A stretch of 64,000 nucleotides of DNA from NCBI RefSeq assembly GCF_040938485.1, contig NW_027271249.1, positions 744,001-808,000 of the forward strand, given 5' to 3'. Each line of letters begins with the position of its first letter. Position 1 is the first letter of the stretch. The DNA comes from Diadema antillarum (Eukaryota). The position numbers were made by a program, and so were the translations under genes. This document shows positions 1,971 to 29,157 of this stretch, one piece after another. The notes beneath the pieces were generated by a model, which made no database searches, was not told where the DNA came from, and saw only the letters and a list, made by a program, of their open reading frames with translations.

Positions 1971-2468
1971 TATTGGGGGGGGGGGAGGACCATCAAAAAC
2001 CAACCAAAACTTAACCCTCTAGGCTCTATCAATATTACAGACATTGACGCAAATACGCTCAAACATTACATATATCTTTGAAACATCTACGTGTATTTTC
2101 AATAGTGTAAAAAATAAAAATAAGATACCACAGATTAAGCGATGGATGGAGTATTATACATTTATACATTAATGGGTGTTACGCATGTGTTACCAAATCA
2201 CCAACGCCCATACATTTTAGAAGACAATGTCTTTTAACCTCTTTATATTAGTGGGTGTCTTGTAATTAGTGGGTGTGTCAGCGCCCGTAAATGATTAAAA
2301 AAAACATACTGGGTTAAAATATGTCACAATATGTTTCACAGAACCCCCATATACATACATACACAGACACCCACATCAACACACGCACACACGCACACAC
2401 ACACACACACACATATCACATATTCATACATTATATATTCAATTCAATATATTTATATATATATATAT

Positions 2469-3419
2469 TGTAGCCTTCTCTCCTTCTGCCGCTAGTGTAT
2501 ATGTTATTATACGCTGTGTGCCATCCGGCCCCGGCAACTAGCTGGAGAAGGGTCAGGATGGTCCGAGCTAGGCTGGGGTCCGTTTGGTTGAAATATACAA
2601 CCAGGCGTGGAGAACGGCGTTGAAATGTACCATATTGCTGGGTTACTTACTACCAGTCTATTCCCATTACTTGCTTACTACCAGAATACTACCAGTCACA
2701 ATTCATCCAACGAAGATACCAGTACCAGAGCAGCTCATCCAATCGCAGATACCAATACCAGTGCAGCTCATCCAATCGCAGATACCAATACCAGTTCACT
2801 CGCATATCATTTCATCAGTTCCGTAATTGCACTGCACTACTCACCAATACTTGTGTTATACTGCAGCAGACTTCAAATGAAACGGTCCAGGCAGTAGTAT
2901 CCACTTCAATCAACGCTTTATTGACACTACTTATATCCACACTTTGGCCCGTATCTAGGCCCACCCAGCTGGCTTATCCACACTTTGGCCCGTATCTAGG
3001 CCCACCCAGCTCTATCGGCCTGTATCCAGGCCCACCCAGCTGTTTCGATACATATTCGACCTCTTATTATTCTCCGACCGCTATATTTCCGAAACAGTTA
3101 CGCATTTTACTTACTGACCTTTTCCTAACATACTAACGCTTATTAACCTTCCTCATCATACGGAAATGATTAAATAACGAAGCAATAATTGTATGAAAGA
3201 TTATTACTGAACATAATCGCATCTCCAACAATTATTACCCCTCTAAAATTCCTAACAAAACAATCCATAAACGTCAGTTTCCTTGAAACTGATCGATTCA
3301 TGATCGATTGCTAAAATAATCGATCGATTATATATTCGACCACGAAACTTTCAATATTGGGCTAATTTTCACCCTTTTTCTTACTAATACACTAATCTAC
3401 CAATTCTCCATTGGTTACA
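2469..3419 (-). repeat. 3' LTR of the Gypsy element (951 bp)
   Basis: Runs tgtagcc...ggttaca. Differs from 16236-17184 by about 3 substitutions and one 2-bp indel by eye. Contains internal ~33-bp and ~40-bp tandem duplications and a minus-strand AATAAA at 2917-2922. Confidence 0.97.
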
Positions 3420-3424
3420 CGACA

Positions 3425-3434
3425 CCCCTCCCTC
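3425..3434 (-). promoter_or_regulatory. Polypurine tract (GAGGGAGGGG) with adjacent hairpin
   Basis: Purine run 5 nt upstream of the 3' LTR on the minus strand. Inverted repeat agctcgg/ccgagct at 3439-3455. Confidence 0.75.
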
Positions 3435-4447
3435 GCTAAGCTCGGTCCCCGAGCTGACAAATAACAACTCGACAACTTGAACAGGTAAGTATAAAATACA
3501 ACAAAATGCAACACTCGATAAAAACCTTGCTACTATCTCAACGTCTTGATAGCATTTTCCTCAAACATCCAACCACATAACGTTTTATACCAAACATCTG
3601 TACGTTCTAACTTCCGCACGAATGGAAACCTTATGAGCACTGCTCAAATCACAAAATCCTACCGGGTCTCACCTCCTATAAACATGAACATGAACATGCT
3701 GTAATCTGTCTTCTAGCGCATTGTGCTGAATGAGCAAAACATGGCACCTCCCATCTTAATGGACCTTCACTGTTTGATTTTCATCCTAACAAATCAAATA
3801 AATGATACCAGCCTAATCAAACATACATCATCCAAAATTACTGCTAAAACTCTCCTCAAACAGAACACGGTCTCTATCACTTTGGTCCTATTTCTTCTTG
3901 AAAGAGAGACAAAATATAATTCAGTGCGATTACTCCAAAACAACCTGGTTTTATCTAAACCGCAACTAATATAAAAATCCACAGTCTGCACTGTTAATCC
4001 CAATATGATAACAAAAAGAATACCTCTCTGGTAGTATGGTCTTTGCTAAACATCGTTATCTTCCATCACTACCAATTAAGTGAATACCTACTTGGTATAA
4101 ACTGAAGTGCTTATGGTTACCTATAACACAACATTAATATCTGCCACTCGAAAACCAAAACCCTACATTTGACATATGTGAATAGTTGAAATAACAACTA
4201 GGTGTATGGAAATTGTACCATTTTCACACCATTTTATACCATATGTGAGCACAACATAGAATCTTAGCATAAGAAACCAAGTCCAGTGCGATACTTAATG
4301 TCCAATGATTACAGCTCATAAATCGGCAAAGCGTCCATCATGCTCATCCCGGTTTCCGTCCTTTCATTTATTTATTGTCCATAAATGTTTCAAAGTTTAA
4401 ACCAAATTAAAAGAACACTGGTTGCTACGTTAAACTGGTTCCCTTGC

Positions 4448-5197
4448 TCAATCGTCGGCCACGATATCTGTCTGCACCTCCAGCCACTCCCCGGCTGTAG
4501 TGATGTACCGCTCAATACGCCTTGTCCACACACGGCCTGGCCGCAACACCCGCCTGGTAGTGTTATCGATGCTGTCCGTCAGACTAGTGGCCTGCTCGCA
4601 CTGGCGCAACTGCAAAAGTCTGTCCCTGATGATGGTCCCGTCCAGATCCGCTGGCCTCACCTGTACCTCGGCATCAACAGCCATCTTAACCTCTGACCCT
4701 CTGGAGGCGGAGGCGACCGGGGACCTTGGAACCTCCCTCTTTCTACCCCCAGTCAGGTCCAATAGCTCACACTCGCTGTCTTGCTCCAGACACGCCTCGT
4801 CAATTAAAGGCGTCTCACCCCGTGATGGTGAAACGCGCCGAGCGGGTGACATGCTGCTAGATGGGACCCTCTTACGCCCCACTGCCACAGGTGACCGGCT
4901 CCTGCTTCTGTCTTTGTTGGGCGTGCTTGGGGCCTTATTCTTAACCGGTGCGGAGACGGGGGTCTTGGTGTGTACCCTGATGGTTGGAGCGCAATTAGAG
5001 GCATGCTCCCCATAATGTCTTTCCAATTCCTTACGATACGTGGTCCTAAATGAGCAACGGTCGCAGTAGTACTTTGGAGAATGTACGTCCTGCTCGTGTC
5101 TCTTCACCGAAGCCCGCGAGGCATAGACTCGTGAACACACCGGGCAGCGGTATGTTTTCTAGGGGTCCTTTTCGTCTCTTCTCTCCTCGGTGGGCAT
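4448..5197 (-). pseudogene. Extra ORF4 of the Gypsy element: tandem C2H2 zinc-finger protein with a premature stop
   Basis: ATG at 5197 (accATG) gives MPTEERRDEKDP, then TAG at 5161-5159. The frame continues KTYR-CPVC...HEQDVH and CDRC...HYGEH (two C2H2 fingers), an Arg/Ser/Pro-rich linker, and a stop at 4448. Confidence 0.75.
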
Positions 5198-5331
5198 GGT
5201 CTTAAAAATAATGATAACAAAACACACACAAAAAGAAGGCATCATTGAATTGTCCGATTTGGTACTGGCGTGTATGCTAAACTTATCCAGTCACTCCACA
5301 TACAACGACAATCACTGTTCCGGCACTGATA

Positions 5332-5955
5332 TCACTTGCAGAATCCGAAACACCAACAATCTGCGCGACCAGTATCTGGCCTAGCCCATACCGGCTCCTG
5401 AACTAGATGGGGGTAGCACTCGTGAGTCCCACACGGCGTATGCAGTTTATGTCGGTAACAGTCTACGACAGATCTGCTACCACGCAGGAAGTCGAGGCCC
5501 AATATTCCTTCATGGCGTATGTCAGCAACAATTACGTCTGCCGTATACGATAGAAGTCCCAATTGTAAAGCGACTGTTGCCTTCCCATCCATTGCCAATA
5601 GCGATCCGTCTGCCATCATCATCGGCTCATCCAGTGGGCTTAACGGTGGCTTACTGCTCGAGTCAATCGTGTCGTAAATCCTCCTGGCTATGAAGGAATG
5701 GGTTGAGCCGGTGTCCACCAACGCTTCAACTCGTGCCCCATTTACTGTGGCTTTTATAAACAGTCCGTGCCAAGTCCCATCCAGAACTGTCCTTTGCTCA
5801 CTTTCAGCAACATTACTGCCCCCAGCGGACCACTGTTCACCCCTCTGGTTCCTCGCCATGTCGGAAATGTCCTGCATGAATGCGAATACCAAAAATGAAA
5901 TAACATGAGATTTCAGTCCCAAAACAGTGAGAGTTCGACATGCCGATATGTGCAT
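5332..5955 (-). CDS. Extra ORF3 of the Gypsy element: stand-alone retropepsin-type aspartic protease
   Basis: HGLFIKATVNGARVEALVDTGSTHSF ... EGILGLDFL. Catalytic DTG at 5715-5707. Open frame; the start may be ATG 5955 or ATG 5859. Confidence 0.88.
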   Translation of the reverse strand: MHISACRTLTVLGLKSHVISFLVFAFMQDISDMARNQRGEQWSAGGSNVAESEQRTVLDGTWHGLFIKATVNGARVEALVDTGSTHSFIARRIYDTIDSSSKPPLSPLDEPMMMADGSLLAMDGKATVALQLGLLSYTADVIVADIRHEGILGLDFLRGSRSVVDCYRHKLHTPCGTHECYPHLVQEPVWARPDTGRADCWCFGFCK

Positions 5956-5957
5956 GC

Positions 5958-8900
5958 CTAGAAGTATCTGGGGGGACGTCTGTTCCGTCTCGGGTATAGG
6001 TGCGGTTCATAGCTGGAATCTCTTCCAGGCTCATCACCTTCCAACGCCAGCTCTGTTGATACAGCCTCATCAACTTGATTTGGGTGGGCATCTGAACCTC
6101 CATCAGACTCCTCGTCATCTGTAGCCGGTTCTGGTACAGCCTCCTCTACTTGTTTCGGTATGAACTCCCACACTGGCCTCTGCACCCCTGTATATGGCTT
6201 CAGGCGGTCCACATGAACCACCAGCGGCCTGGTCCTTGGTGAAAGCTGCAGCCGTAGCGTAACATCTGATAGTTTCGTGACGATCAAATATGGCCCCAAC
6301 CATTTCGTCTGCAACTTGGGACTGCAGCCCTTCTTCCGCATCTTTCTCCGGAGCCACGCATACTGCCCAACATTGTATGCTGCGACATGGGCCCTCTGAT
6401 CGTAAAACCGCTTCTGTTTTCTGCAGGCCAGCCCCAATCTAGCTCGTGCACGGTGATGTGCTCGTCTCATCCTTGTACGGAGATTCTCTGCATAATCTGT
6501 GCAGACCTCCTCCTGGTGGTCAGCATCATCTGGTTCAGCGACATCGCCTGGCATCAGCACCTCTCTTTCCATTGGGAAGCCGCTGGTTCTCTGTTGCAGT
6601 GGAGCACGCGGTGTTCTACCAGCACCCTTTCTCCTTGCACATATGTCACATTCACGCAGAGCAGACCGGAAATCTGCTGCCATCCCAATCCAGTAGTATC
6701 GTAGCCGAGCACGAGCTAGCGACTTGCCCATACCAAAATGGCCACCAGTCATAGAAGCGTGAACCGCCTGAATCACATCTCTCACAAGGACTCTTGGTAG
6801 GATAATCTGCCTCCTCACAGTGCTACCATCCGCTGCCTCCCAGCGACGGACAAGGACCCCGCTGCTAACCTCCAGCGCTTCCCAGTGATCCAAGAGCTGT
6901 CTTGCTTTGGCAGACCATGATGCTGCTTTTTCATCAGACGGTCGCTCAGCTGCCAGTTTAGCGGCACGAACCGGATTGATGTCCTCGTCTTGTTCCTGTA
7001 AACTGCCGATGTCGGGAGCCTCATCTGCTTCTTGCTCTACCAGTACCCTGGCTTGGTCTGCTGGTATCTCCTCATCACAACCGCATTGTCTACATGGTCG
7101 GCGTGACAACCCGTCTGCATTGCCATGACTTCGCCCTTGCCTATGACGGATCTCAAAATCATATTCCGAGATCAACTCCAACCACCTTGCCAGCTGACCC
7201 CTGGGGTCCTTGAATCTGACAAGCCATTGCAGCGAGCCATGATCTGTCCGTATCACCACATGACGGCCGTATAGGTACTGACGAAACTGCTTCAGAGAGA
7301 CCACCACTGCTAGGAGCTCCTTCCTCGTCACGCAGTAATTTCTCTCCGCTCTCCTCAGTGTGCGGCTTGCATATGCCACCACCCTCTCAGCACCATCTTG
7401 GACTTGGGAAAGCACGGCCCCAACACCAACGTCGCTGGTATCAGTATCGAGGATATAACTGCCATCTGGGCGTGGATAGGCCAGGATAGGAGGCGATGAT
7501 AATCTCCCCTTCAGCTCATCGAATGCCTCTTGGCATTCTTTCGTCCAGAGGAACTTGTGATTTTTCTCCATTAGCTGGTGGAGTGGTTTGGCGATGGAGG
7601 CGAAGCCTGCAACAAACCTGCGGTAGTACGATACCAGCCCCACAAAGCTCCTCACTTCCTTGGTGGTCCTCGGTGTTGGCCATTGTTGAATGGCGGATGT
7701 CTTGTCTGGATCTGTTGTCACTCCATCCTTCGACACGATATGCCCCAGGTACCTAACGCTGGTGTGAAATAGCGAGCACTTCGACGGCTTAAGCTTCAAG
7801 CCGGCCTCACGGAGTCGCTGGAAAACCACTCGAAGTCGTGACAGCTCATCTTCCACTGTCTTGCCAAAGACAATCACGTCGTCCAAGTACACAAGCAACA
7901 TTTCCCAGGTAAGGCCTGCCATCACTCTATCCATCAGACGCTCGAAGGTGGCTGGCGCATTACATAGCCCGAAGGGCATAACGCGCCAGGCATACAACCT
8001 GCCATTAGCGATGAAGGCTGATTTCTGCTTAGCCTGCTCGTCAAGCTGCACTTGCCAATACCCACTGGCAAGATCGAGGGTTGAGAACCACTTTGCCCCG
8101 CTGAGTGCATCCAGTGTGTCATCTATTCTGGGCAGCGGATAAGCGTCTTTCAGTGTTGCAACATTCAGTTGGCGGTAGTCTATGCACATCCTCTTGCTCC
8201 CATCCTTCTTTGTGACCAAGACCACGTTGGAAGACCAAGGACTGCTTACTTGCTCAATCAGCCCCTGAGATAGTAGCTGATCTATCTGTCTGTCAATCTC
8301 CGCCCTCTGCTCTGCTGGATATCGTCTTGGTGCTTGTCGCACTGGTCTCGCATCACCAGTATCAATGCTGTGCTGGACTAGATCAGTTCTGCCCAGATCT
8401 GTTGGTCCATGTGAGAAGACATCTGCAAAATCTTCCAGCAGCTCTGCTACTTGCGTGTGGTACTGCTCTGGGACCTCTTCAATGCTTCGCTCGTACAGCT
8501 CTACCACATGTGATGGCATGCCATCACCACCGTTCACGTCACGTGGAATTACCTCGACCTGTTCAGCGTTTTGGAGCTGAGTCAGACACGCCACCATAGT
8601 GCCCTGCTTCACCACTCTCTCTTCCTTTGTGGGGTTGTAAACTCTGATAGGGAGTACCTCAGCATCCGCCTCAACGACAGCCCTTGCTACCAGCAAGCCC
8701 TTACTGAGGGTCTCAGCCTGGTTGGTAGGAGCTTCCAGCAGGCCAACTCCTGCGATTGGTTGTGGCCTTCCACCTGCCACCATGCCTTTCAATATTGCCT
8801 CGTGTCCTGGGGGTACTGAACTGGTCTCGCTTGCTATGATTCTGCGGCAGAAAGGCTGACCCCGATGATCTTTGCATTGGATCGTCTCCCATGGCAGCTG

Positions 8901-9234
8901 CAGCTCCAGTTTGCGGCAATCCAGCACCGACTGTGTTTGCATCAAGAAGTCCAACCCGATGATACCCTCATTGTGAAGATTGGCCACCGTCACCTCAAAC
9001 ACGAACAGCAAATGTCCCATCTGGATTTCAGCCAGTGTTTTACCACTGGTCTCGAGTGGAGAACCGTCTGCTTGGCGCACTGTACGAGTTGCTCGCTGCA
9101 ATACCGGCTTCCTTGCATCTTCAATCTTGCTGAAGATCGCATTGGACACATACGTCTGCGATGAACCGGTATCAATTAGGAATGTGATGGGCTGACCGTT
9201 GATCTTAGACTCAACATGAAGACCATGATATCTG
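5958..9234 (-). CDS. pol: pol portion of gag-pol: protease, RT, RNase H, integrase lacking its catalytic core
   Basis: FLIDTGSS and GIIGLDFL (PR); LPRIDD and YLDDVIVFG (RT); DTDTSDVGVGAVLSQ, ELLAVV and TDH (RH); HHCC zinc finger HASMTGGH...CDIC. GFPMER is fused directly to EVLMP, so no DDE core is present; a GPY-like module (WLGPY) follows. Confidence 0.95.
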
Positions 9235-9603
9235 CTATTGATTTGATTTATTTATTCACCGTAAATTCAGCATAAAAAAGAGTACAGTAAAAGTATGACA
9301 AGCAATATAAAACATATGATCAACAGTAGAATAATACATAGAATGCATCAAATATGGAAAAGAGGAAGAAAACAAGAGAGGGAAATAAGCAACGAATATG
9401 TACGGTAGGATAGCCCATTCAGCTCAGTCTACGAAGACATGGCTGTTCTTCCATGGGGTCCTAGTATAAAATTGATATTGACATCAGGAAAAAAAAACAA
9501 AACAAACATTCAAACTGTAAAAAATATGTATATCACTGACAAGAGAAAAAAGGACATTGTATGTCGACTAAGCTACAAAGAAAGTAAACATACTATAAAA
9601 GGA

Positions 9604-12600
9604 TTACAAAAAATCTGGAACAAATGATATCAATTTACTAGAAAATGAAGCAGGACTACAAACAACTTTTAAGCTTGGAGGGAGATTGTTGTATTGCACA
9701 GCACCCCTATAATAAAAAGTTCTTTTACAGTATTCTGTCCTGGGTTTTGGCAATGCTAAGTTACCTGTTGACCTAAGTAAATAATTAAAATGACAATATT
9801 GGAATTGATCTTTTAAATACGGAGGTGCAAAATCATGTAATGTCTTAAAAACCATGGTGTTTAAATGGCAACAACGACGAGCTGCTAAAGACTTCCAGCC
9901 TAGACGTGCATGCAGCTCTCTGACCGACATATGTCTATACGGACTTATTCCTAATATTATTCGACATGCTCTGTTTTGAAGTTTCTGTAATAACCTTGTG
10001 TGTTTAGAACTGGTTGAACCATATATGACATCTCCATAATCAAAGATAGGAAGAATAATTGCGTTATAAACAACTTTTAGATTGGACAGATTGATTGTAT
10101 GTCGTAATCGGGATAACAACCGTACCAATTTACTTATTCGAATGCACATCTTATCAATATGGAGGTTCCATTTCAGACATGGATCTAAGATCATGCCAAG
10201 ATATTTCGTAGAATGTACCTGACAGATAATATTTTCATTTACCAATAAATGTAGTTTATTGCACTTTTTTAACTTCATCTGAGAGCCGAATAACATACAA
10301 ACCGTTTTATCTTGATTGAGGCTCAACTTCGATTCACACAACCAGCTAAAAATGTTCTGTAGTTCAGAATTCAAAACAGACTCAATCATAATGATGTCTG
10401 AATGTGAAAAATAAATAACAGTATCATCAGCGTATAAATGTATTGAACAGGAATGGACTTGTTTGACTATGCTGTCAATATATATGATGAACAAGAGTGG
10501 GCCCAAAATTGACCCTTGCGGAACACCGTAATCGATATTGGCTTCCACTGATGTTGATGAACTAAAATGTGTATATATTCTGCGATCAGTTAAATAACTA
10601 GAGAACCATGACAAACAACTCTCAGCAACACCTATAGCAGATAACCTTTTTAACAGAATGCAAGGATCAACAGTATCGAACGCTTTGCGTAAGTCTATAA
10701 ACACTGCACCGGTGTACTGACCGTGGTCAATGGCGGTCAGCCAATCATCAGTTACTTTTAGTAAAGTAGAAATGGTTGAATGATTTTTCCTAAAGCCCGA
10801 CTGGGCTTGGGATAAAATATTGTTATCTTTCAAGTAATTAGTCAGTTGGACTTGAACAAGCTTTTCCAATATTTTAGATACCGAAGACAGAATAGAAATG
10901 GGTCTATAATTATTTGGGGATGCTCTGTCTCCAGTTTTATATATTGGAATTATTTTTGATCTCTTCCAATTGGAAGGAAATGTACATTCTGATAAAGATC
11001 TATTGAATATGTGGGTCAATGAAGAAACAATAACCGGAAGAGCCATTTTTAGCATTATCATAGAAATATTGTCTACTCCCGTAGATTTCTTATTACTCAT
11101 TCCCAGAATTGTTTTCATTACATCATCTTCTGTTACTGAATTAAATTCAAAACATGATTGGACAGAATTAATATCAACAGTATCATTTCTGAAATCCGGA
11201 ATAGTAGCCGCTAGTTCGGATCCTATATTTGCGAAAAAATCATTGAATTGATTAGCCAAAACTGAACTGTTATTGCTATCAGTGCTGTTGTTAACAAGCT
11301 TTTTTGACGGTAGGAGCGGTTTAAGCACCGACCAAACATTTTCACCGGAAGAGCAATTAAAAACATTTGATAATTGTTTAGAGAAGTATTCTTTTTTTGC
11401 CAATCTGCATTGCTTTGTTACTAAGTTTCTGACTTTACGATACATATTCATAATATATTCATCATTGTATTTTGAGGCCTTTCGTTTCAGATCATCTCTC
11501 TTTTTCATTAACATTTTAATATTTGCGTTTATCCAGGGGGCAGGCTGTTTTCGTACGCGTTTCTTTTTAACCGGGGCAAATTTTTCAATCGAATCCATAA
11601 AATATGTTTCCCAAAGTTCAATTGCTTCATCAATAGTTGTGGCTGCTGATATTTCATGCCAAGGGTGATTAGACAAATGAATACGAAAGGCTTCCAAATC
11701 TACATTTTTTAAATTTCGGTAACTTATAATCCTAGGACTTTGCACAGATTTAAAATTCAAAATCAAATAACATAAATTGTGATCACTCAGTCCAACATTA
11801 ATTACTCCATAAGCTTTTACTATATCAATCGCATTGGTCATCATATGATCTATTAAACTCCTCGTATTATGCGTGACTCGAGTAAACTGCGTGGTATTTA
11901 TTTGCTGCAATGAAAATAATGTATTTATTTCTTCAAAACGCTTCAAAACATTCGACTTATATTTCTTGCGAATATCACAATTTATATCTCCCATCACAAT
12001 AATATTTAATCTGAAAGTATCAACAAAGGTTAAAACATTTTCATATATATTCATAATTTCAATTTTGCTGTCAGGAGGGCGGTACCAGGACATAAACAAA
12101 AAAGGTGCACATGATTTCGGTCGGACTCTGATCAAAATAAGCTCCAGCGAATCAGTTACATCAGAATGTATCACCTCATAAGGAATTGAATTGCGAATAT
12201 AAATAGCAACACCACCGCCATTACGATTCCGATCCTTACGGATTATATCGTAATGTTGAATACCTATTTCATTATCACTTATAGAATCATCCAAAAGTGT
12301 TTCATTCAAAGCTAAAATATGAATATTATTATCATATAAAAACAGTTTTATTTCTTCAACATTACGATATAAGCTACGAATATTAAGGTGAGTACATTTA
12401 AAATCATTATTTTTGAAGTGATCGTATTGTCGTGATACATCAGAACCATCATGCTCATTATCGTAACGAGAGCTCACAGGAGGTGTGATGAATTCTCTAG
12501 TATCAATATTTGACTCATCAGGTATACAATTAGCAAAAGGTAAGCACTGAAAAACGCATTTTGTACATCTCCAGTTCAAAAATTCATATTGTACATCATC

Positions 12601-12726
12601 ATAATGTTCATTTTTTACGCCTTCACATTTTGTGTGCGACCAGGCTGAGCATTGGGTGCATTGTAATCCTCTTTGGTTGTTTTTGACTGCCTTAGTACAT
12701 ATAACACAAGGGTATTGCACAGTCAT
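9604..12726 (-). CDS. LINE ORF2: PHD finger, APE endonuclease, reverse transcriptase
   Basis: CVIC...CTQC..SHTKC...CTKC (PHD); LNET, GDINCD and SDH (APE); DLRKAFDTV, GVPQGSILGPLLF and YADD (RT). Uninterrupted. Likely start is MTVQYPC at 12726 (the ORF track extends to 12795). Confidence 0.95.
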   Translation of the reverse strand: MTVQYPCVICTKAVKNNQRGLQCTQCSAWSHTKCEGVKNEHYDDVQYEFLNWRCTKCVFQCLPFANCIPDESNIDTREFITPPVSSRYDNEHDGSDVSRQYDHFKNNDFKCTHLNIRSLYRNVEEIKLFLYDNNIHILALNETLLDDSISDNEIGIQHYDIIRKDRNRNGGGVAIYIRNSIPYEVIHSDVTDSLELILIRVRPKSCAPFLFMSWYRPPDSKIEIMNIYENVLTFVDTFRLNIIVMGDINCDIRKKYKSNVLKRFEEINTLFSLQQINTTQFTRVTHNTRSLIDHMMTNAIDIVKAYGVINVGLSDHNLCYLILNFKSVQSPRIISYRNLKNVDLEAFRIHLSNHPWHEISAATTIDEAIELWETYFMDSIEKFAPVKKKRVRKQPAPWINANIKMLMKKRDDLKRKASKYNDEYIMNMYRKVRNLVTKQCRLAKKEYFSKQLSNVFNCSSGENVWSVLKPLLPSKKLVNNSTDSNNSSVLANQFNDFFANIGSELAATIPDFRNDTVDINSVQSCFEFNSVTEDDVMKTILGMSNKKSTGVDNISMIMLKMALPVIVSSLTHIFNRSLSECTFPSNWKRSKIIPIYKTGDRASPNNYRPISILSSVSKILEKLVQVQLTNYLKDNNILSQAQSGFRKNHSTISTLLKVTDDWLTAIDHGQYTGAVFIDLRKAFDTVDPCILLKRLSAIGVAESCLSWFSSYLTDRRIYTHFSSSTSVEANIDYGVPQGSILGPLLFIIYIDSIVKQVHSCSIHLYADDTVIYFSHSDIIMIESVLNSELQNIFSWLCESKLSLNQDKTVCMLFGSQMKLKKCNKLHLLVNENIICQVHSTKYLGMILDPCLKWNLHIDKMCIRISKLVRLLSRLRHTINLSNLKVVYNAIILPIFDYGDVIYGSTSSKHTRLLQKLQNRACRIILGISPYRHMSVRELHARLGWKSLAARRCCHLNTMVFKTLHDFAPPYLKDQFQYCHFNYLLRSTGNLALPKPRTEYCKRTFYYRGAVQYNNLPPSLKVVCSPASFSSKLISFVPDFL

Positions 12727-13001
12727 GTAGCAAAGATATGTATTAAAAGGACCGGGTAAATGAAGAAAAAAATAAGTAAAAGAAAAAAAAAACACAGAAA
12801 GATATATAACAAAAGATTGAAGTTACGCAAGACTTGAGAGAGAGAGAGAGAAAAAAAAACACTACAGTCAATTTACTAAATGAATAGAACAAAGTTGAGA
12901 ATGCATCATAATCACTTTTACACTTATTTGGAAGCAAACTCTTATACAATAGAGCAGACTGATGTGGACCGGCATATCTATACAGTGCCAAATTCAGAGA
13001 G

Positions 13002-13778
13002 TCATATCAAGTCTAAGTCACTTTCGGAATTTATCGCACGCTTGATAGTTTTCCCGCCAGTAGCAGGGAGCAGGGCAACCACTCTCCCATCGGAAGTCCA
13101 AGCTGACAGCACCTTGCGACACGCTTTGGTTTTGCGAAGCAGCGAAGCATTTTCCTTTGTAAGATCTTCATCGATGCCCATCTTGGAACCCTTGAGTGCA
13201 CGCCGTTTGGAAATGACAAGCTTCCTTACGCGATATGAAACGAACTTCACTATAATTGGACGAGGCTTCGTTTTGTTGTTCCGCGAAGCGCGACTGCTCC
13301 TCCTCAGAGATCCGTCCGGGCTTTCACTATCGCTAGGGGATCCGATGCGGTGAGATCTTTCGATGTCATTCTTTGTGAGCGGTATTTTGAGGATTTCGTT
13401 CACAATGTGGCAAACTTGATCATCTGTGCTCTCGCCCTTTGACTCCTCCACGCCATAGAATCTCAGACAATTACGTCTTGAGTATTGCTCTTGTGCGCAG
13501 ACACCTCGCTGAATGCTCTGAACAAGGTTGCGCTCCTTGTCAAGAGCTTTGTGTAGATTCGTGATTTCGGTTGACTGGACCTCAATGCGCTTTTCCAAGT
13601 CCATTATCTTAGCCTCATTTGCCTCAACACGTTGGGCAATGCTTGATAATTCAGCTTGCACGGTTTCACGGACAGCATTCCTGATTGCTTGGAGGAATGC
13701 ATCTCCTTCAACAAAAGCTTTCATTGTCTCATCAATGATGGCTCTGACCTTTTCCTGAGTCATCGACGCATTAGGCAT
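13002..13778 (-). CDS. LINE ORF1: coiled coil plus L1-type RRM nucleic-acid chaperone
   Basis: Coiled-coil N half, then EQYSRRNCLRFYGVEE, IERSHRIG, PRPIIVKF and IDEDLT motifs typical of CR1/L2 ORF1. Likely start is MPNASM at 13778. Confidence 0.88.
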   Translation of the reverse strand: MPNASMTQEKVRAIIDETMKAFVEGDAFLQAIRNAVRETVQAELSSIAQRVEANEAKIMDLEKRIEVQSTEITNLHKALDKERNLVQSIQRGVCAQEQYSRRNCLRFYGVEESKGESTDDQVCHIVNEILKIPLTKNDIERSHRIGSPSDSESPDGSLRRSSRASRNNKTKPRPIIVKFVSYRVRKLVISKRRALKGSKMGIDEDLTKENASLLRKTKACRKVLSAWTSDGRVVALLPATGGKTIKRAINSESDLDLI

Positions 13779-14418
13779 GATGGCGGATGAGTTATTTGCA
13801 ATGACGATATAAATCGTATGACGGGTAGAGCTATACAAACGCCCAAGTGAGAGAAGTCAAATGACAGTTGAAAGTCTTAAATACAAATAAGGTTGTATCG
13901 TTGAAAATGACTCAAAGATGACAGATAAAACTCCCTTAGCTCCAAGAGTCAAATCAGTTCACACGACCATTTTCAACATGGCGTCGGCCATTGGTGTGTG
14001 TAGTACCCATTTCAACAAGTGGTTACATGCGGAGTTCAAAATGATGAATACGGTGCATTCTCAAATGGAGACATTAGGCAGTGTTAATGTATCATAGATA
14101 CTGCAAGAGTGGCCATATGAAAACAATCACAGACTATGCAAAATGTATGTCGGAAAGGTATATGCACGAGCTATATACGCGGTGAGTAATGGACATTCAC
14201 ATACCACGCTTGCATAATATAGGTTCCATCACGATTGTACCGCCTTTGGCCGCCACAGTACGCAATCACGTCCAAGTTCCACGATCACTCTTTCTTGAGA
14301 ATATGAGTTTATCCAACAAGTTTCAGACACATGGCCGCTGTGATTTTGTAAGAAATACAAAATCCAAGGAAAGTTCTCTGAGTCTATGGACGAAAATTCC
14401 AGTTTCTTCAATAAAAAT

Positions 14419-16191
14419 TCAGTGAAAGTAGAGTGATGATTGGAGAGACTCGTTTCTGTGTCTATTGCCAACTGGCCGTGCTTGCTCTGCTTGTTCAGCC
14501 TGGGGTGCTCGCTGTGGTTGTTCTGGTGTCCTTTGTTGCACGCCACCAACATCGCTACGAAGTGGAGCTGGTCCCCACTCTGGCTGACTGCGTGCTGGTA
14601 TCTGCTCGATATTTGATGCTTGGGGGCAGTGCCTCCAACCATGGCCAACTTGATTGCAGTGGTAGCACCTCCTTCTGTCTGCATCGATGTTTGCTGGCAT
14701 ACTTCTAAGTGGTTGCTTCACTAGACGTGGGCAATCTCGTTTCCAATGGCCAGCTTGGCCGCAATTGAAACAATTGTTGCTCTGGTCCCCAGGCAGTGAT
14801 GATGCTGGTACCCTTGCAAATTGTGATGTCGCGTTGGTTCTCGATCGTGTTGGTGGAGAAGATTCCACTCTGGAAATCAGCTCTTCCATTGCTTTCGTCA
14901 TTCGCCTCATAGCGCCGTCTTTCTCCTTGGTTGCAGGGCTCTTCTGCTCTACATCATCAGTCGCCAGTGCTCTGCTATACCGCTGCGACCGGCCATCGCT
15001 TCTCTCCGTCTCCATCCTCAGGAAAGCCTCTGTACTCAATGCTGCTTCAATCGCCTCGTCAAGTGTGCGGGGCTGGGCGCGGAAAAGACCTTCTCGTATC
15101 TCTGCTCTTACGACCGCGTCCATGAAGTGGCCTCTTGCTAAGCGATCTTGCCCCGCCTCGTCAAATTCTTGGTAGGCTAATGCAGTCAGCTCCCGAATAC
15201 CTTGTCCCAACTCCTGCAGAGTTTCCTTTGGTTTCCTCCTCCTGGTCCGCAGCTCAGCCAAGAAGACTTCGGATTTGCCTGCTGGGCCGAACCGTTGCTT
15301 AAGCCTATTTACCAGCTCGCTGTACGTTAACCTCCTTCCTGTCTGTTGAACAAGGACCTTTACAGCTGGGCCTCGCATGCTGGCAGCCAAATACTGCAGT
15401 GCTTCATCTTCGGACCATCCGTTCACCCCTGCGCAGGCCTCAAAATGACTCAAATAGTCAAGAATCGGCCCCCTGCCGTCGAATCTATCGGGAGTCATCC
15501 GCAGCTTATCTCCACCTCTATATCTGCGCTGGTAACTGCCTTCGTCCCACAGTTCTGGTCTTCGCCACGGTGTACCCATTGCTGATGGCGCTGCTGATGA
15601 ATTACCTCCAGCACCTACCAGAACTTCATTTACTGGTGCTGGCTGGTTGCCCGTTGCTGGTGTCTCCCAACTGGTCTGCTGGATCCTGCTGGGGCCGCCT
15701 GCCATCCTACCTTCACATGTAGGACCACTCTGCCATTGCTGACTTCCAGTCATCATGCCGACACCAAACCGTTGCGCTGTAACTGGTTGATTGCGATACC
15801 TGCTGTATCCATCGTTGACTGATCTGCTTTCAGGTGTTGCAAAGCTACTGGGGAACGAATGAGGAATCTCAACGCTTCCACCAGATCGCCTTGCAAAACT
15901 AGCAGGAGGAGCTTTACTTCCGGATGACTCTGCTGCAGCATTCGGTGCTGTGGTGAAGCCATCCTGGTCTAGTGGTGTGCTGCTGCTAATTCCTGCCCTT
16001 CCTGAACTCATCGTTCCTGAGCTGGGGTAGCTGGTGGTAGCGGGTCCCTGCGACGGAGCTGGAGTTCTTCCGAGTGCTGCACGAAGATCTGTCATCATCG
16101 CTTCGACGTCTGCCAGCTCCTGTTCTAGCTGCCACCAGATTTCCGCTGGAGTTTGCTGACGCACGCCAGCAGTCCTTGCTGAGTGATGCAT
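14419..16191 (-). CDS. gag: Gypsy gag with two CCHC zinc knuckles; the last ~14 codons and the stop derive from the LINE
   Basis: PDRFDG...FEACAGVNGW and capsid-like region. Knuckles CFNCGQAGHWKRDC and CYHCNQVGHGWRHC. The native frame continues across the TSD into 9234. Confidence 0.93.
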   Translation of the reverse strand: MHHSARTAGVRQQTPAEIWWQLEQELADVEAMMTDLRAALGRTPAPSQGPATTSYPSSGTMSSGRAGISSSTPLDQDGFTTAPNAAAESSGSKAPPASFARRSGGSVEIPHSFPSSFATPESRSVNDGYSRYRNQPVTAQRFGVGMMTGSQQWQSGPTCEGRMAGGPSRIQQTSWETPATGNQPAPVNEVLVGAGGNSSAAPSAMGTPWRRPELWDEGSYQRRYRGGDKLRMTPDRFDGRGPILDYLSHFEACAGVNGWSEDEALQYLAASMRGPAVKVLVQQTGRRLTYSELVNRLKQRFGPAGKSEVFLAELRTRRRKPKETLQELGQGIRELTALAYQEFDEAGQDRLARGHFMDAVVRAEIREGLFRAQPRTLDEAIEAALSTEAFLRMETERSDGRSQRYSRALATDDVEQKSPATKEKDGAMRRMTKAMEELISRVESSPPTRSRTNATSQFARVPASSLPGDQSNNCFNCGQAGHWKRDCPRLVKQPLRSMPANIDADRRRCYHCNQVGHGWRHCPQASNIEQIPARSQPEWGPAPLRSDVGGVQQRTPEQPQRAPQAEQAEQARPVGNRHRNESLQSSLYFH

Positions 16192-16214
16192 GTTGCGCTG
16201 CCCTGTCTACTGCC

Positions 16215-16233
16215 AATCCCACTCCTGACACCA
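16215..16233 (-). promoter_or_regulatory. Primer binding site complementary to the 3' end of tRNA-Leu(CAG)
   Basis: The plus strand aatcccactcctgacacca equals the 3' 19 nt (including CCA) of metazoan tRNA-Leu(CAG) as recalled. It lies 2 nt from the 5' LTR. Confidence 0.9.
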
Positions 16234-16235
16234 CG

Positions 16236-17181
16236 TGTAGCCTTCTCTCCTTCTGCCGCTAGTGTATATGTTATTATACGCTGTGTGCCATCCGGCCCCG
16301 GCAACTAGCTGGAGAAGGGTCAGGATGGTCCGAGCTAGGCTGGGGTCCGTTTGGTTGAAATATACAACCAGGCGTGGAGAACGGCGTTGAAATGTACCAT
16401 ATTGCTGGGTTACTTACTACCAGTCTATTCCCATTACTTGCTTACTACCAGAATACTACCAGTCACAATTCATCCAACGAAGATACCAGTACCAGAGCAG
16501 CTCATCCAATCGCAGATACCAATACCAGTGCAGCTCATCCAATCGCAGATACCAATACCAGTTCACTCGCATATCATTTCATCAGTTCCGTAATTGCACT
16601 GCACTACTCACCAATACTTGTGTTATACTGCAGCAGACTTCAAATGAAACGGTCCAGGCAGTAGTATCCACTTCAATCAACGCTTTATTAACACTACTTA
16701 TCCACACTTTGGCCCGTATCTAGGCCCACCCAGCTGGCTTATCCACACTTTGGCCCGTATCTAGGCCCACCCAGCTCTATCGGCCTGTATCCAGGCCCAC
16801 CCAGCTGTTTCGATACATATTCGACCTCTTATTATTCTCCGACCGCTATATTTCCGAAACAGTTACGCATTTTACTTACTGACCTTTTCCTAACATACTA
16901 ACGCTTATTAACCTTCCTCATCATACGGAAATGATTAAATAACGAAGCAATAATTGTATGAAAGATTATTACTGAACATAATCGCATCTCCAACAATTAT
17001 TACCTCTCTAAAATTCCTAACAAAACAATCCATAAACGTCAGTTTCCTTGAAACTGATCGATTCATGATCGATTGCTAAAATAATCGATCGATTATATAT
17101 TCGACCACGAAACTTTCAATATTGGGCTAATTTTCACCCTTTTTCTTACTAATACACTAATCTACCAATCCTCCATTGGTT

Positions 17182-17184
<3 letters not shown>
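16236..17184 (-). repeat. 5' LTR of the Gypsy element (949 bp)
   Basis: Direct repeat of 2469-3419 with TG...CA ends, followed by (AT)n. Confidence 0.97.
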
Positions 17185-17213
<29 letters not shown>

Positions 17214-19175
17214 CTGTCTTAACAGTTTTCAACTGTGACACGATGTACATATCGCTGATGGTGGCTGTTACATCGTGTCGAAGCGCAATAAAGCACTAAT
17301 CTCGCAAAAAAATTCTGCAACCTGCTTTTACACCATCCTATAGGAATAAATTTGTGTTTTATAATTATAATGTTCACAAAGATATCACCCGACCATTTTC
17401 TCTAGTGCAGTGGAAAGATTTCACTTTGATTTAAAAAAAGAAAAAAAAAGAAAATAAGTATTTTTAAGATACCACTTCGGTCTTTTGACGAACCTTATTC
17501 AGAAACATCCTTCGTTCAACTACGATATACCTTATGGGTAATTCCGAGCAAGCGTGTGCGTGTCATTGTAACATCAAAACCTTTGAAAGCAAAATTCGAT
17601 GGTCGGAAGATAGATGGAGCACCTTTACAAAGGCGTGGTATATTTGCAGCATTCAACGATGGCATTGACTCCCAGCTTTCTTTATTCTTGCTGTAGACAA
17701 GTGTATGGTAATTAATTGAATGGAAATCCATTAGTGGCATTTCCAACTAAAAATAATAAAAGACCTGAACATTCAAGATTGATCTCAGAATGTTTTCCTG
17801 TCGTTTGCTATTTTATGCCATGCAAAAAGAAAAAAAAAAATCAATCGACTAGCAGCATAATTCTTTTGTGTTGTCAGTGTGAATTGAAACTTTGTTTGCA
17901 TCAATGCATTTTCTTGGCTTCTCCGTTAGAATGCCTGTTGTTGATGTTGTTTCGCCAGTGCAAAACAAAATCAAGCGAAAAATTGCGATGCTTGAATCTC
18001 CCCTGCTATGCCTATTGAGCAATAAATAATCATAAACGACGCTGGAAAGCGACCCAGCATAAAAAGAAATCATTTTGAAAAGGTACAGTAACTGTTTGTA
18101 AGGCAGTAACGTTGATACAGCAATAAAACTTTATTCATCGTTTGAATGCAATTTCATTTCTTAATGTCAAATGTCCTTTTTTTTAAAGCGCTATAAGAGT
18201 GAAAAGGCCTTACTTGTTATTTTGAAGCTACGATTTATTCATTTATTGTTAGACATATAAAGATGATCACCGAAAAAAAGCAGCGAAATTCAAATGAGAC
18301 GGTAAAGTATACACTGGAATGACAAGGGCACACATAACTCATGCATGCGCTGAATTACGAAAAAATAACAAAACAGATTACGGTAACATAAAAAGTAAGC
18401 AAACGATAGCTGCCAAAAATGCGTATATATATGATATAAATATATATCACAAAACACAATCGTGCAAACTGAAAAAAAACACTTATTTGCTGTCACTGTG
18501 GTTCTCTAACTACTAGTATTTTCTCATTCAAGTTGATACTATGCTCAGTAGTAAGTACATTCAAGTTTAAAAATGCATGGTTATGTCAGTGCAAAAGATA
18601 TACTGGCACGTCGCAAATTATCACTCTTGTTCTCTGTTTATGTAAAACAACAACAACAACAACAACAAAAGTGACATCGGATTGTGGTGTGATTATGGAA
18701 TAAACGTTACCAGTCACTTTTGTGCGTGAACTCTTGTATAAATTATATTGTATATGGAAATGAAAAGAAATGAAAATGAAGTAAAATGAAAATGAATTGA
18801 AATGAAAATGAAATAAAATGAAAATGAATTGAAATGAAAATGAAACAAACCCTGTTAATACAATGTAAGCCTCATGTTATTTGCTGAAGACTCTGGAACG
18901 TTGTCCTCTGCACAGCATTAAATAATGCTGACTCAATTTTTGAAGTTAAGGAGAGGTCATTTGAACCTCTGAAAGCATCTGTAACTTCCAGGGTCGGACG
19001 GATCCAAGCAAGGATCTTGATGGGGGAGGAATGCAGTCATACCTTTACAAACGCATCGGTTTTTTACTTTTGAGACTTTTTGATATTGAATTGTACATAA
19101 TCAAGTGCTTGGATACTTATCAACAACTATTAACAAATTATCAGATAAGTGCTATGGGAGATCAAAGACAGTTAT

Positions 19176-19344
19176 GGGCCCTGTTTCATAAAGCTGTTCG
19201 TAAAGTTACGAACAACTTACGAGCGACTGGTGATCAGTTCTGATGTGTTATACTTATCAGAAAATATATAATTCAACACAAGAACTGATCACCAGTCGCT
19301 CGTAAGTTGTTCGTAACTTTACGAACAGCTTTATGAAACACCCC
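19176..19344. mobile_element. Foldback MITE (possibly Harbinger-like), absent from the paralogous unit
   Basis: About 60-bp inverted repeats (tgtttcataaagctgttcgtaaagttacg...gatcagttc). The site in unit 2 (~29785) is empty. Confidence 0.8.
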
Positions 19345-29012: not shown

Positions 29013-29157
29013 NNNNNNNNNNNNNNNNNNNNNNNNNNNNNNNNNNNNNNNNNNNNNNNNNNNNNNNNNNNNNNNNNNNNNNNNNNNNNNNNNNNNNNNN
29101 NNNNNNNNNNNNNNNNNNNNNNNNNNNNNNNNNNNNNNNNNNNNNNNNNNNNNNNNN
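29013..29157. other. Assembly gap (145 N)
   Basis: Run of N. Confidence 1.

What the first reader, a model, noticed from the sequence alone, without database searches (positions are those of the whole stretch)
4448..5955. Gypsy element carrying a two-gene accessory module at the env position: a second retropepsin and a C2H2 zinc-finger protein
Seen: downstream of pol and inside the LTRs are an intact stand-alone aspartic protease ORF (DTG, GILGLDFL) and a two-finger C2H2 ORF, both on the sense strand. The extra protease shares the HGL...NG...DTGS...EGI(I/L)GLDFL layout of the element's own protease but is highly diverged, which points to an old duplication that has stayed open. No RT or LTR follows it, so it is not a nested element. 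Established: Metaviridae normally carry one protease, and this slot is empty or env-like. Inference: these are accessory proteins, e.g. a protease acting on host or Gag substrates and a DNA/RNA-binding regulator, analogous to complex retrovirus accessory genes. I cannot tell whether this architecture has already been catalogued.
Basis: partly seen in the sequence, partly recalled or inferred. Interest (0 to 1): 0.85.

Follow-up and report, generated by a model that had tools for sequence, protein, structure and literature searches.

The report
Gypsy retrotransposon with two accessory genes
A family of Gypsy-type retrotransposons in a marine animal carries, after its polymerase gene, a second separate protease gene and a zinc-finger gene. 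Both are kept in the same order and under selection in diverged copies, so this is a retrovirus-style accessory gene set and not debris.

Summary
On the minus strand lies a Ty3/Gypsy element (2469-17184, LTRs 99.3% alike). [quoted passage not shown]

This is not a nested fragment. The order pol-PR2-ZnF-about 1 kb-LTR recurs in five fetched contigs, and parts of it in three more, from five public assemblies (two of them Tara). These copies are only 55-75% identical to the window's. dN/dS is 0.1-0.4 for close pairs, and third-codon-position changes dominate in distant pairs, as for gag and PR1.

PR2 has DTG and ILGLDFL and models as a retropepsin. It forms its own clade, and its closest outside relatives are the family's own PR1 group, which weakly favours an old duplication. 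A related family has the zinc-finger gene directly after pol and no PR2, so that gene is the older one.

Each gene has its own ATG behind a conserved polypyrimidine-AG motif, and PR2's frame relative to pol differs between copies. I infer spliced subgenomic mRNAs. Protein functions are untested.

This copy is defective: gag-pol has one nested non-LTR insertion and one deletion removing the integrase core, and the ZnF gene has one stop. I rate it a new variant of a known kind. Repbase, Dfam and GyDB could not be checked.

The parts
2469..3419 (-). 3' LTR of the element (TG...CA ends; internal tandem repeats of 33 nt x2.8 and 41 nt x2)
   Evidence: LTR alignment, 954 columns with 5 mismatches and 2 gap columns; direct repeats; tandem repeats
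3420..3440 (-). polypurine tract directly upstream of the 3' LTR
   Evidence: read from the sequence
3441..4447 (-). about 1 kb non-coding 3' region between the zinc-finger gene and the polypurine tract. The spacing from the ZnF stop to the next gag start (about 1.9-2.0 kb including the LTR) is kept in siblings
   Evidence: (L005, L009). An ORF in L005/L009 at this position is not conserved
4448..5197 (-). ORF4, the zinc-finger gene: two N-terminal C2H2 fingers, a Ser/Arg/Pro-rich linker and a conserved C-terminal domain of about 75 aa. In this copy it is broken by one in-frame stop; siblings encode 255-272 aa intact
5198..5240 (-). polypyrimidine tract plus AG (3' splice-site-like) ending 3 nt before the ORF4 ATG. 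Conserved in five siblings and in the related family L011
5332..5859 (-). ORF3, PR2: stand-alone retropepsin of 175 aa (DTG, ADGS flap, ILGLDFL) with a conserved Cys/His-rich tail. Intact here. The frame stays open upstream to 5955, but that stretch is not part of the siblings' ORF
5860..5905 (-). T-rich tract plus CAG (3' splice-site-like) 12 nt before the PR2 ATG, conserved in siblings
5958..16191 (-). gag-pol (one continuous ORF in siblings). Broken here by one nested insertion and one in-frame deletion of about 460 nt that removes the integrase catalytic core. Domains: gag with CCHC knuckle 14419-16191; PR1 8865-9242; RT 7734-8213; RNase H 7161-7547; integrase zinc domain 6627-6797; integrase C-terminal SH3 6192-6350
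9604..13838 (-). nested non-LTR retrotransposon in the same orientation. ORF1 is 13002-13838; ORF2 is 9604-12795 (PHD finger, AP endonuclease, RT). Both are open. Not part of the Gypsy element
16215..16233 (-). primer-binding site, 2 nt from the 5' LTR. Identical in L001, L005 and L009 and nearly so in L011
16236..17184 (-). 5' LTR
2440..2468 (.). flanking (TA)n. The same repeat follows the other end at 17185-17213. The element sits in a TA microsatellite, so the target-site duplication cannot be delimited

Best explanation
SHOWN. The window holds a young but defective copy of a Ty3/Gypsy (Metaviridae) LTR retrotransposon family from a marine animal. The family layout is LTR, PBS, gag-pol (one ORF: gag-PR1-RT-RNaseH-IN), ORF3 (PR2), ORF4 (ZnF), about 1 kb, PPT, LTR. 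ORF3 encodes a free retropepsin of about 175 aa with every catalytic and structural motif of PR1 plus a Cys/His-rich tail. ORF4 encodes about 250-270 aa with two C2H2 fingers, an RS/SP-rich disordered linker and a conserved C-terminal domain of unknown fold. Both genes are conserved in order and under purifying selection across subfamilies. A related family has the zinc-finger gene and no PR2, so it is the older of the two. The 3' half of the window's copy (pol tail, PR2, ZnF, LTR) has a different history from its pol, so subfamilies recombine.

INFERRED, origin. PR2 arose by duplication of the PR-coding segment from this family's own ancestry, and was placed between pol and the zinc-finger gene.

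INFERRED, expression. Each gene is translated from its own ATG on a spliced subgenomic mRNA, as with env in errantiviruses and retroviruses and with CERV in Cer1. A conserved polypyrimidine-AG motif sits 3-12 nt before each ATG, and PR2's frame relative to pol varies.

INFERRED, function. The ZnF protein is a nuclear nucleic-acid-binding regulator of the element's own expression, acting either on the repeat-bearing LTR or on export and splicing of the intron-containing genomic RNA. PR2 is an active dimeric protease supplied in trans, uncoupled from the 1:1 Gag-Pol product of a single-ORF element. It would therefore act at a different time or place, or on different substrates, than PR1.
For: Architecture: LTRs, PBS and PPT; Pfam domains. 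Conserved synteny: L001 has gag-PR, RT, RNase H, rve, PR2, ZnF. L003 has IN, PR2, ZnF. L005 (Tara) has pol, PR2 and a 255-aa ZnF ORF, then LTR and gag. L007, L002, L008 and L009/L010 agree. One further contig carries intact copies of both genes. Selection: PR2 omega is 0.10 (window-L008) and 0.25-0.38 (L001-L003). ZnF omega is 0.22-0.31 (L001-L007). For comparison PR1 is 0.07-0.19 and gag 0.20. Third-position excess holds in every domain, e.g. PR2 core 24/9/66 and fingers 6/12/44. PR2 fold: AlphaFold pLDDT 83, core above 90; Foldseek matches to Ddi1 RVP domains and retroviral proteases, E down to 1e-7; sequence profile matches to ASPRV1 and DDI1; invariant D-T-G-S, A-D-G-S and I-x-G-L-D-F-L shared with PR1. 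PR2 clade bootstrap is 94-100%, and its nearest outsiders are the PR1 group. ZnF is older than PR2: L011 has an intact 1769-aa gag-pol, LTRs 99.8% alike, and an ORF3 directly after pol with a homologous two-finger N-terminus (hhalign probability 96.5%, E 9e-10) and no PR2. Separate ORFs: PR2's frame relative to pol differs in the window, L005 and L003 (coordinates). Start contexts are GACATGG and ACCATGC. Acceptor-like motifs are conserved. Mosaic: nucleotide identity to L005 is 84-90% across pol, then 64-73% from the pol tail through PR2 and ZnF and 41-69% across the 3' non-coding region and LTR. dS for PR1 is 0.4-0.6 but saturated for PR2 in the same pair. Not env: no transmembrane segment and no env family hit.
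Against: There are no RNA data. No conserved 5' splice donor was found between the PBS and early gag, so an internal promoter or re-initiation is not excluded. The sister position of PR2 to the PR1 group has only 19% bootstrap support. The ZnF model is poor (pLDDT 54), and its C-terminal domain has no fold match, so the regulator role rests on the fingers and composition alone. Pfam C2H2 scores are just below the curated cut-offs. Known copies come from only five assemblies and the host is unidentified. The family was not found in JGI metagenomes or IMG/VR. In decayed copies PR2 and ZnF break about as often as expected for their length, so there is no sign of host domestication. Selection among copies shows a benefit to the element lineage but does not say which activity is selected.
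Confidence: 0.7

Rival explanations
1. The two ORFs are debris: a fragment of an unrelated or nested element, or chance ORFs in GC-rich DNA, present in this copy only.
For: This copy does contain a nested element and a deletion, so rearrangement has occurred here. Gene models with two protease domains exist elsewhere, but they are chimeras of two elements.
Against: The same order and spacing are seen in at least seven contigs from five assemblies at 55-75% identity. The PR2 clade is monophyletic. There is strong third-position excess. No second RT, gag or LTR flanks the pair.
Confidence: 0.02
2. The module is a conserved passenger with no role in the element's life cycle: a hitch-hiking duplication and a captured host zinc-finger gene that simply have not decayed yet.
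For: No functional data exist. Subfamilies recombine, which can spread a cassette. Outside the fingers, the ZnF protein has no recognisable domain.
Against: dS is saturated between subfamilies while dN stays near 0.2, and omega is 0.1-0.4 in close pairs, the same as for gag and PR1. The zinc-finger ORF persists in a family whose RT is only 67% identical. No host homologue appeared among 5.8 billion proteins in the length range searched.
Confidence: 0.07
3. PR2, and perhaps ZnF, are not separate proteins. They are made as C-terminal extensions of Pol by read-through or frameshifting and released by PR1.
For: PR2 starts within a few bases of the pol stop in the window, and its ORF overlaps the end of pol in L005. 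Amino-acid similarity in the PR2 frame extends a little upstream of the conserved Met.
Against: PR2's frame relative to pol differs in the window, L005 and L003. A conserved Met in good context begins every intact PR2. ZnF is separated from PR2 by about 110-130 nt containing stops.
Confidence: 0.06
4. Same genes, different mechanism. PR2 acts mainly by pairing with PR1 (a heterodimer that tunes or delays Gag-Pol processing) and not as an independent protease. The ZnF protein tethers the integration complex to chosen DNA and does not regulate RNA or transcription.
For: Retropepsins work as dimers (established knowledge), and PR2 keeps the interface and active-site motifs it shares with PR1. C2H2 fingers are typically DNA-binding. 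The element sits in a TA microsatellite.
Against: PR2 and PR1 are only 35-41% identical. One insertion site says nothing about targeting. The RS/SP-rich linker points more to RNA processing than to tethering (for composition; the reading is my inference).
Confidence: 0.15

Closest known systems
Bdelloid rotifer LTR retrotransposons (Vesta, Juno, TelKA) with captured ORF3s (PMC5408684)
   Same: [quoted passage not shown] The ORF3s are described there as typically separate, spliced transcription units, and gains and losses map onto the pol tree.
   Different: The ORF3 types reported there are env-like fusion proteins, GDSL esterase/lipase, DEDDy exonuclease, and coiled-coil or transmembrane proteins. 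No second retropepsin and no C2H2 protein is reported. Here there are two extra genes, not one.
Cer1 of C. elegans and its CERV protein (PMC10309623)
   Same: A Ty3/Gypsy element with a non-env gene at the env position, expressed from a spliced mRNA. CERV is a phosphorylated nuclear protein needed for export of the unspliced genomic RNA. This is the best functional analogy for the RS/SP-rich ZnF protein.
   Different: No sequence relationship was shown. My length-limited search (126-402 aa) could not have returned the 517-aa CERV. CERV is not reported there to contain a zinc finger. Cer1 has no second protease.
Errantiviruses (Drosophila gypsy, ZAM and relatives) (PMC3383448)
   Same: Gypsy elements with a third gene after pol. 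From my own knowledge, that gene is expressed by splicing from the genomic transcript.
   Different: Their third gene is an envelope glycoprotein. PR2 and ZnF have no transmembrane segment and no env similarity.
Stand-alone cellular retropepsins: the DDI1/Ddi1 RVP domain and ASPRV1 (SASPase)
   Same: They have the same fold and active-site motif and are the best sequence and structure matches among solved structures. They show that a retropepsin can work outside a Gag-Pol polyprotein.
   Different: Those are host genes. PR2 is inside a mobile element, next to that element's own PR1, and its closest sequence relatives are Gypsy PR1 domains.
Regulatory genes of complex retroviruses (own knowledge; nothing fetched or compared)
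   Same: They lie near the 3' end, are expressed from spliced mRNAs, and control the element's own transcription or RNA export.
   Different: There is no homology, and no retrovirus known to me encodes a second retropepsin gene or a C2H2 protein. This comparison is an analogy only.

Membership tests
Ty3/Gypsy (Metaviridae) LTR retrotransposon | Long terminal repeats with TG...CA ends, with a PBS after the 5' LTR and a PPT before the 3' LTR | tested here: met
   LTRs at 2469-3419 and 16236-17184, 99.3% alike. The PBS is 2 nt from the LTR and conserved in siblings. A purine tract abuts the 3' LTR. The matching tRNA was not identified; no tRNA gene lies in the window.
Ty3/Gypsy (Metaviridae) LTR retrotransposon | pol domain order PR-RT-RNaseH-IN (integrase after RT) | tested here: met
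   Pfam RVT_1, RT_RNaseH, Integrase_H2C2 and Integrase_p58_C/SH3 occur in that order, with PR1 upstream. The rve core is absent in this copy but present in L001, L003, L005 and L011.
Ty3/Gypsy (Metaviridae) LTR retrotransposon | gag with a CCHC zinc knuckle | tested here: met
   zf-CCHC, E 5.3e-8, in the 590-aa gag ORF.
Ty3/Gypsy (Metaviridae) LTR retrotransposon | Target-site duplication | tested here: inconclusive
   Both ends abut (TA)n, so no discrete duplication can be delimited. A paralogous segment lacks the element.
Retropepsin (peptidase family A2), for PR2 | Asp-Thr/Ser-Gly catalytic motif, flap, and the C-terminal hydrophobic-Gly motif | tested here: met
   D-T-G-S, A-D-G-S and I-L-G-L-D-F-L are invariant in all PR2 and PR1 sequences aligned. 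Pfam hits are above the curated cut-offs.
Retropepsin (peptidase family A2), for PR2 | Retropepsin fold | tested here: met
   AlphaFold model pLDDT 83 (core above 90). Foldseek probability 1.00 to Ddi1 RVP domains and to XMRV, EIAV and HIV proteases.
Retropepsin (peptidase family A2), for PR2 | Homodimeric active enzyme | not testable with these tools
   No multimer prediction or assay was available.
Classical C2H2 zinc-finger protein, for ORF4 | C-x2-4-C-x12-H-x3-5-H spacing, here twice in tandem | tested here: met
   Both fingers are invariant at the Cys and His positions in the full-length siblings. A family profile matches tandem C2H2 domains of HIC2, ZBTB7A and ZFAT, best E 8.7e-5.
Classical C2H2 zinc-finger protein, for ORF4 | Score above Pfam's curated threshold for zf-C2H2 or zf-C2H2_4 | tested here: not met
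   26.2 against 27 and 23.7 against 25.2 bits in P0003 and P0287; 17.2 against 27 in the window's truncated ORF. The models are short and the miss is narrow, so I still call these C2H2-type fingers on spacing and profile evidence.
Errantivirus-type element (env-bearing Gypsy) | The third ORF encodes a membrane glycoprotein (signal peptide or transmembrane anchor, fusion protein homology) | tested here: not met
   No env family hit. The maximum 19-residue hydropathy is 0.2-1.5, below the transmembrane range.
Spliced regulatory accessory gene of a retroelement (Cer1 CERV type) | [quoted passage not shown] | tested here: met
Spliced regulatory accessory gene of a retroelement (Cer1 CERV type) | Expressed from a spliced subgenomic mRNA | not testable with these tools
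   Only conserved acceptor-like motifs before both ATGs were found. No donor was identified and there are no RNA data.
Spliced regulatory accessory gene of a retroelement (Cer1 CERV type) | Sequence homology to CERV | not tested
   The protein search was limited to 126-402 aa, and CERV is 517 aa. No named hit of any kind was returned.

The most novel reading that the evidence does not exclude
A lineage of invertebrate Gypsy elements has independently evolved a complex-retrovirus-like genome in two steps. It first gained a spliced C2H2/RS-rich regulator of its own RNA or transcription. It then gained a second, separately expressed retropepsin with its own substrates or timing. As far as I could find, this would be the first retroelement shown to encode two distinct proteases as separate genes.
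Probability: 0.35. Interest if true: 0.75.

Novelty: new variant of a known kind. Interest (0 to 1): 0.62.

Why it matters
Extra genes at the env position show how simple retrotransposons become complex retrovirus-like agents. Few such genes have been described outside env itself (rotifer ORF3s, Cer1 CERV, plant extra ORFs).

Here two non-env genes are stacked, and comparison with a related family gives their order of acquisition. One of them is a paralogue of a core enzyme. That raises a specific question: why would an element that already makes one protease per Gag-Pol molecule keep a second, free one?

The zinc-finger/RS protein offers a second, independent case, alongside CERV, for the idea that spliced retroelements need their own factor to handle intron-containing genomic RNA. 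The family is young (LTRs 99.3-99.8% alike), recombines between subfamilies and is visible in Tara samples. Expression and distribution can therefore be described without manipulating the element.

Tried and rejected
- Exact look-ups of the window's PR2 and of a neighbouring receptor gene found nothing, so the host genome was not identified. Sample accessions were not found in any paper.
- Scans of JGI metagenome contigs and IMG/VR with ZnF and PR2 alignments found no relatives. One alignment was too diverse to search with.
- Proteins with two protease domains (P0019, P0037) looked like parallels, but they carry two gag/CCHC regions and are chimeric gene models.
- L002 seemed to have PR2-ZnF without pol. 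It is a 5'-truncated copy.
- A possible fifth ORF in the 3' region of L005/L009 is not conserved.
- The ZnF structure model is poor and gave no significant fold match.
- No conserved splice donor was seen near the PBS or the gag start.
- No Rfam family and no tRNA gene lies in the window.
- The first tree script timed out. One bootstrap count was invalid because PR2 cluster members had been left in the comparison set. It was redone.
- Five literature searches found no second-protease or C2H2 ORF3 in an LTR retrotransposon (one search was a syntax error). Repbase, Dfam and GyDB cannot be searched here.
Full report
**1. What is there**

The finding's coordinates correspond exactly to two minus-strand ORFs, 5332-5955 (207 aa) and 4448-5140 (230 aa). 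They lie inside a Ty3/Gypsy element that occupies 2469-17184 on the minus strand.
- The LTRs are 2469-3419 and 16236-17184. They have TG...CA ends and differ by 5 mismatches and 2 gap columns in 954.
- A primer-binding site lies 2 nt inside the 5' LTR (16215-16233), and a purine tract abuts the 3' LTR.
- Both ends sit in (TA)n, so a target-site duplication cannot be delimited. A paralogous copy of the flanking DNA elsewhere in the window lacks the element.
- Pfam finds a CCHC knuckle in gag. In the 1063-aa pol ORF it finds RT, RNase H, the integrase zinc domain and the integrase C-terminal SH3, but no integrase core.
- The element's own protease (PR1) lies just upstream of the listed pol start.
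- A non-LTR retrotransposon with two open ORFs is nested between gag and PR1 in the same orientation.

**2. State of this copy (counts only)**

- gag-pol has one nested insertion and one in-frame deletion of about 460 nt that removes the integrase catalytic core.
- ORF4 (ZnF) has one in-frame stop.
- ORF3 (PR2) is intact.

With LTRs 99.3% alike, the insertion is recent. A copy without an integrase core must have been inserted by proteins supplied from other copies (inference).

**3. The two proteins**

*PR2*
- It matches three retropepsin families above their curated cut-offs.
- It shares invariant D-T-G-S, A-D-G-S and I-x-G-L-D-F-L with PR1.
- Its AlphaFold model has mean pLDDT 83, with the core above 90. 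The model matches Ddi1 RVP domains and retroviral proteases, with Foldseek E down to 1e-7. Sequence profiles match ASPRV1 and DDI1.
- Siblings start at a conserved Met (window 5859), giving about 173-175 aa. A conserved Cys/His-rich tail follows the core.

*ZnF protein*
- Siblings encode 255-272 aa.
- It has two fingers with canonical C2H2 spacing. Pfam scores are narrowly below threshold, but a family profile matches tandem C2H2 domains, best E 8.7e-5.
- A Ser/Arg/Pro-rich linker of variable length follows.
- The conserved C-terminal domain of about 75 aa is predicted as one helix plus three strands at modest confidence and has no fold match.
- Neither protein has a transmembrane segment.

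**4. Is it a family feature?**

Yes. Searching 5.8 billion proteins with the ZnF ORF gave eight relatives, and searching with PR2 gave four close relatives plus one weak match. All are unnamed and come from ENA assemblies.

| Locus | What it holds |
|---|---|
| L001 | gag-PR, RT, RNase H, integrase core, PR2, ZnF |
| L003 | integrase, PR2, ZnF |
| L005 (Tara) | pol, PR2, ZnF, then LTR and gag |
| L007 | end of pol, PR2, ZnF |
| L002 | a 5'-truncated copy |
| L008 (Tara) | PR2 98% identical to the window's |
| L009/L010 | ZnF, LTR, gag |

One more contig carries intact copies of both genes. Identity to the window is 63-98% for PR2 and 55-66% for full-length ZnF relatives.

Breaks in siblings, as counts:
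- L001: pol is in seven pieces, while PR2 and ZnF are intact.
- L003: RT is in three aligned pieces, the rest of RT and RNase H are missing, and ZnF is in two aligned pieces.
- L005: pol is called as two genes across a single aligned stretch.
- L007: PR2 is in three aligned pieces.
- L002: PR2 and ZnF are in two aligned pieces each.

The short genes decay about as expected for their length in dead copies. Their conservation therefore reflects selection in the active lineage, not host domestication.

**5. Selection**

| Comparison | dN/dS (omega) |
|---|---|
| PR2, window-L008 (3 non-third-position vs 9 third-position differences) | 0.10 |
| PR2, L001-L003 | 0.25-0.38 |
| ZnF, L001-L007 | 0.22-0.31 |
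| PR1 | 0.07-0.19 |
| gag | 0.20 |

Between subfamilies dS is saturated while dN is about 0.2. Third-position differences dominate in each domain:
- PR2 core: 24/9/66
- fingers: 6/12/44
- C-terminal domain: 16/6/38

**6. Origin**

PR2 sequences form one clade (94% and 100% bootstrap). In a search of 1.84 billion representatives, the only hits at E below 1e-23 were PR2 relatives. The next best hits, at 38-39% identity, are gag-PR fragments of the PR1 type.

Against 91 protease domains of the wider lineage, PR2 averages 38-41% identity to the PR1 group and a median of 29% overall. The NJ tree puts PR2 next to the PR1 group, but with 19% support. An old duplication within the family's own ancestry is therefore favoured but not proven.

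L011 is a related Gypsy element from the same assembly, with RT 67% identical to the window's. It has an intact 1769-aa gag-pol and LTRs 99.8% alike. Directly after pol it has a 304-aa ORF whose two-finger N-terminus is homologous to ORF4 (hhalign probability 96.5%). It has no PR2. The zinc-finger gene therefore predates PR2, and the 'module' was built in two steps.

**7. Mosaic structure**

Against L005, nucleotide identity is 84-90% through pol. It then falls to 64-73% from the pol tail through PR2 and ZnF, and to 41-69% across the 3' non-coding region and LTR. For the same pair, dS is 0.4-0.6 in PR1 but saturated in PR2. Different coalescence times within one element indicate recombination between subfamilies.

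**8. Expression (inferred)**

- PR2's frame relative to pol differs in the window, L005 and L003 (coordinates), so a fixed frameshift or read-through fusion is unlikely.
- Each gene begins at a conserved ATG in a good context.
- A T-rich tract ending in CAG lies 12 nt before the PR2 ATG in all subfamilies.
- A polypyrimidine tract ending in AG lies 3-6 nt before the ORF4 ATG in all subfamilies and in L011.
- These look like 3' splice sites. I found no conserved donor near the PBS or the start of gag.
- Spliced subgenomic mRNAs are my preferred model, by analogy with errantivirus env, rotifer ORF3s and Cer1 CERV (PMC3383448, PMC5408684, PMC10309623). An internal promoter is not excluded.

**9. 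Function (inferred)**

In siblings gag-pol is a single ORF, so PR1 is made one-for-one with Gag. A free PR2 would uncouple protease supply from Gag-Pol, or give a second specificity. Pairing with PR1 is a rival mechanism.

The fingers plus an RS/SP-rich linker suggest a nuclear nucleic-acid-binding regulator. If the element splices, it needs a way to export unspliced genomic RNA, which is what CERV does for Cer1. Action on the LTR, which carries tandem repeats, is the alternative. None of this is shown.

**10. Novelty**

Extra ORFs at the env position are a known kind of feature. Five searches of the held literature found no LTR retrotransposon with a second retropepsin gene or a C2H2 ORF3. 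Repbase, Dfam and GyDB are not available here, so prior cataloguing cannot be excluded. I rate it a new variant of a known kind.

Consensus lines printed by the alignment tool were not used.
- Comparisons across frameshifts used single aligned pieces only.
- The N runs (29013-29157 and 48171-48315) were left alone. No fetched contig looked human.

Noticed in passing
window 9604-13838 (-): A nested non-LTR retrotransposon with both ORFs open: ORF1 of 278 aa and ORF2 of 1063 aa (PHD finger, AP endonuclease, RT). It was inserted into the young Gypsy copy, so it is itself recent.
   Followed up: partly
window 20820-21845 (+) and 30985-32184 (+): Two intronless rhodopsin-family receptor ORFs (7tm_1, E 1e-32 to 1e-33) in a segmental duplication spaced about 10.4 kb apart. 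They indicate that the host is an animal.
   Followed up: partly
window 2000-2412 and 17215-17698 versus 26044-26473 and 27629-28119: The Gypsy element's flanks are collinear with a paralogous segment that lacks the element and has about 1.15 kb of other AT-rich DNA instead. The insertion therefore postdates the duplication.
   Followed up: partly
window 35147-37231 (+): A second non-LTR reverse-transcriptase ORF (694 aa, RVT_1), unrelated to the finding.
   Followed up: no
L004:1-12125: A contig with alternating gag-N-terminal fragments and ZnF-derived ORFs at a period of about 5 kb. It looks like an array of an internally deleted derivative that keeps part of ORF4 but lacks pol and PR2.
   Followed up: partly
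L011:5938-12336 and 13819-19400: A related Gypsy family with an intact 1769-aa gag-pol and a 304-aa two-finger ORF3 but no PR2. In its first finger, Gln replaces the first His. The element is followed by a long array of tandem repeats with a period of about 1 kb.
   Followed up: partly
window 5958-6250 onward versus L005: Nucleotide identity to the closest pol relative drops from about 85% to about 65-70% at the pol tail and stays low through the LTR. The copy is a recombinant between subfamilies.
   Followed up: yes
window 2703-2795, 2934-3011 (and 16470-16562, 16697-16776): Each LTR holds two short tandem repeat blocks (33 nt x2.8 and 41 nt x2). They are candidate regulatory repeats and a conceivable target of the ZnF protein.
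   Followed up: no
window 4500-5015 (+): A 171-aa ORF antisense to the ZnF gene. It is probably a by-product of the GC-rich, stop-poor opposite strand. Conservation was not checked.
   Followed up: no
P0019, P0037 (proteins): Public gene models with two retropepsin domains (one from the pseudoscorpion Cordylochernes scorpioides). They are fusions of two adjacent elements, not true two-protease elements.
   Followed up: yes
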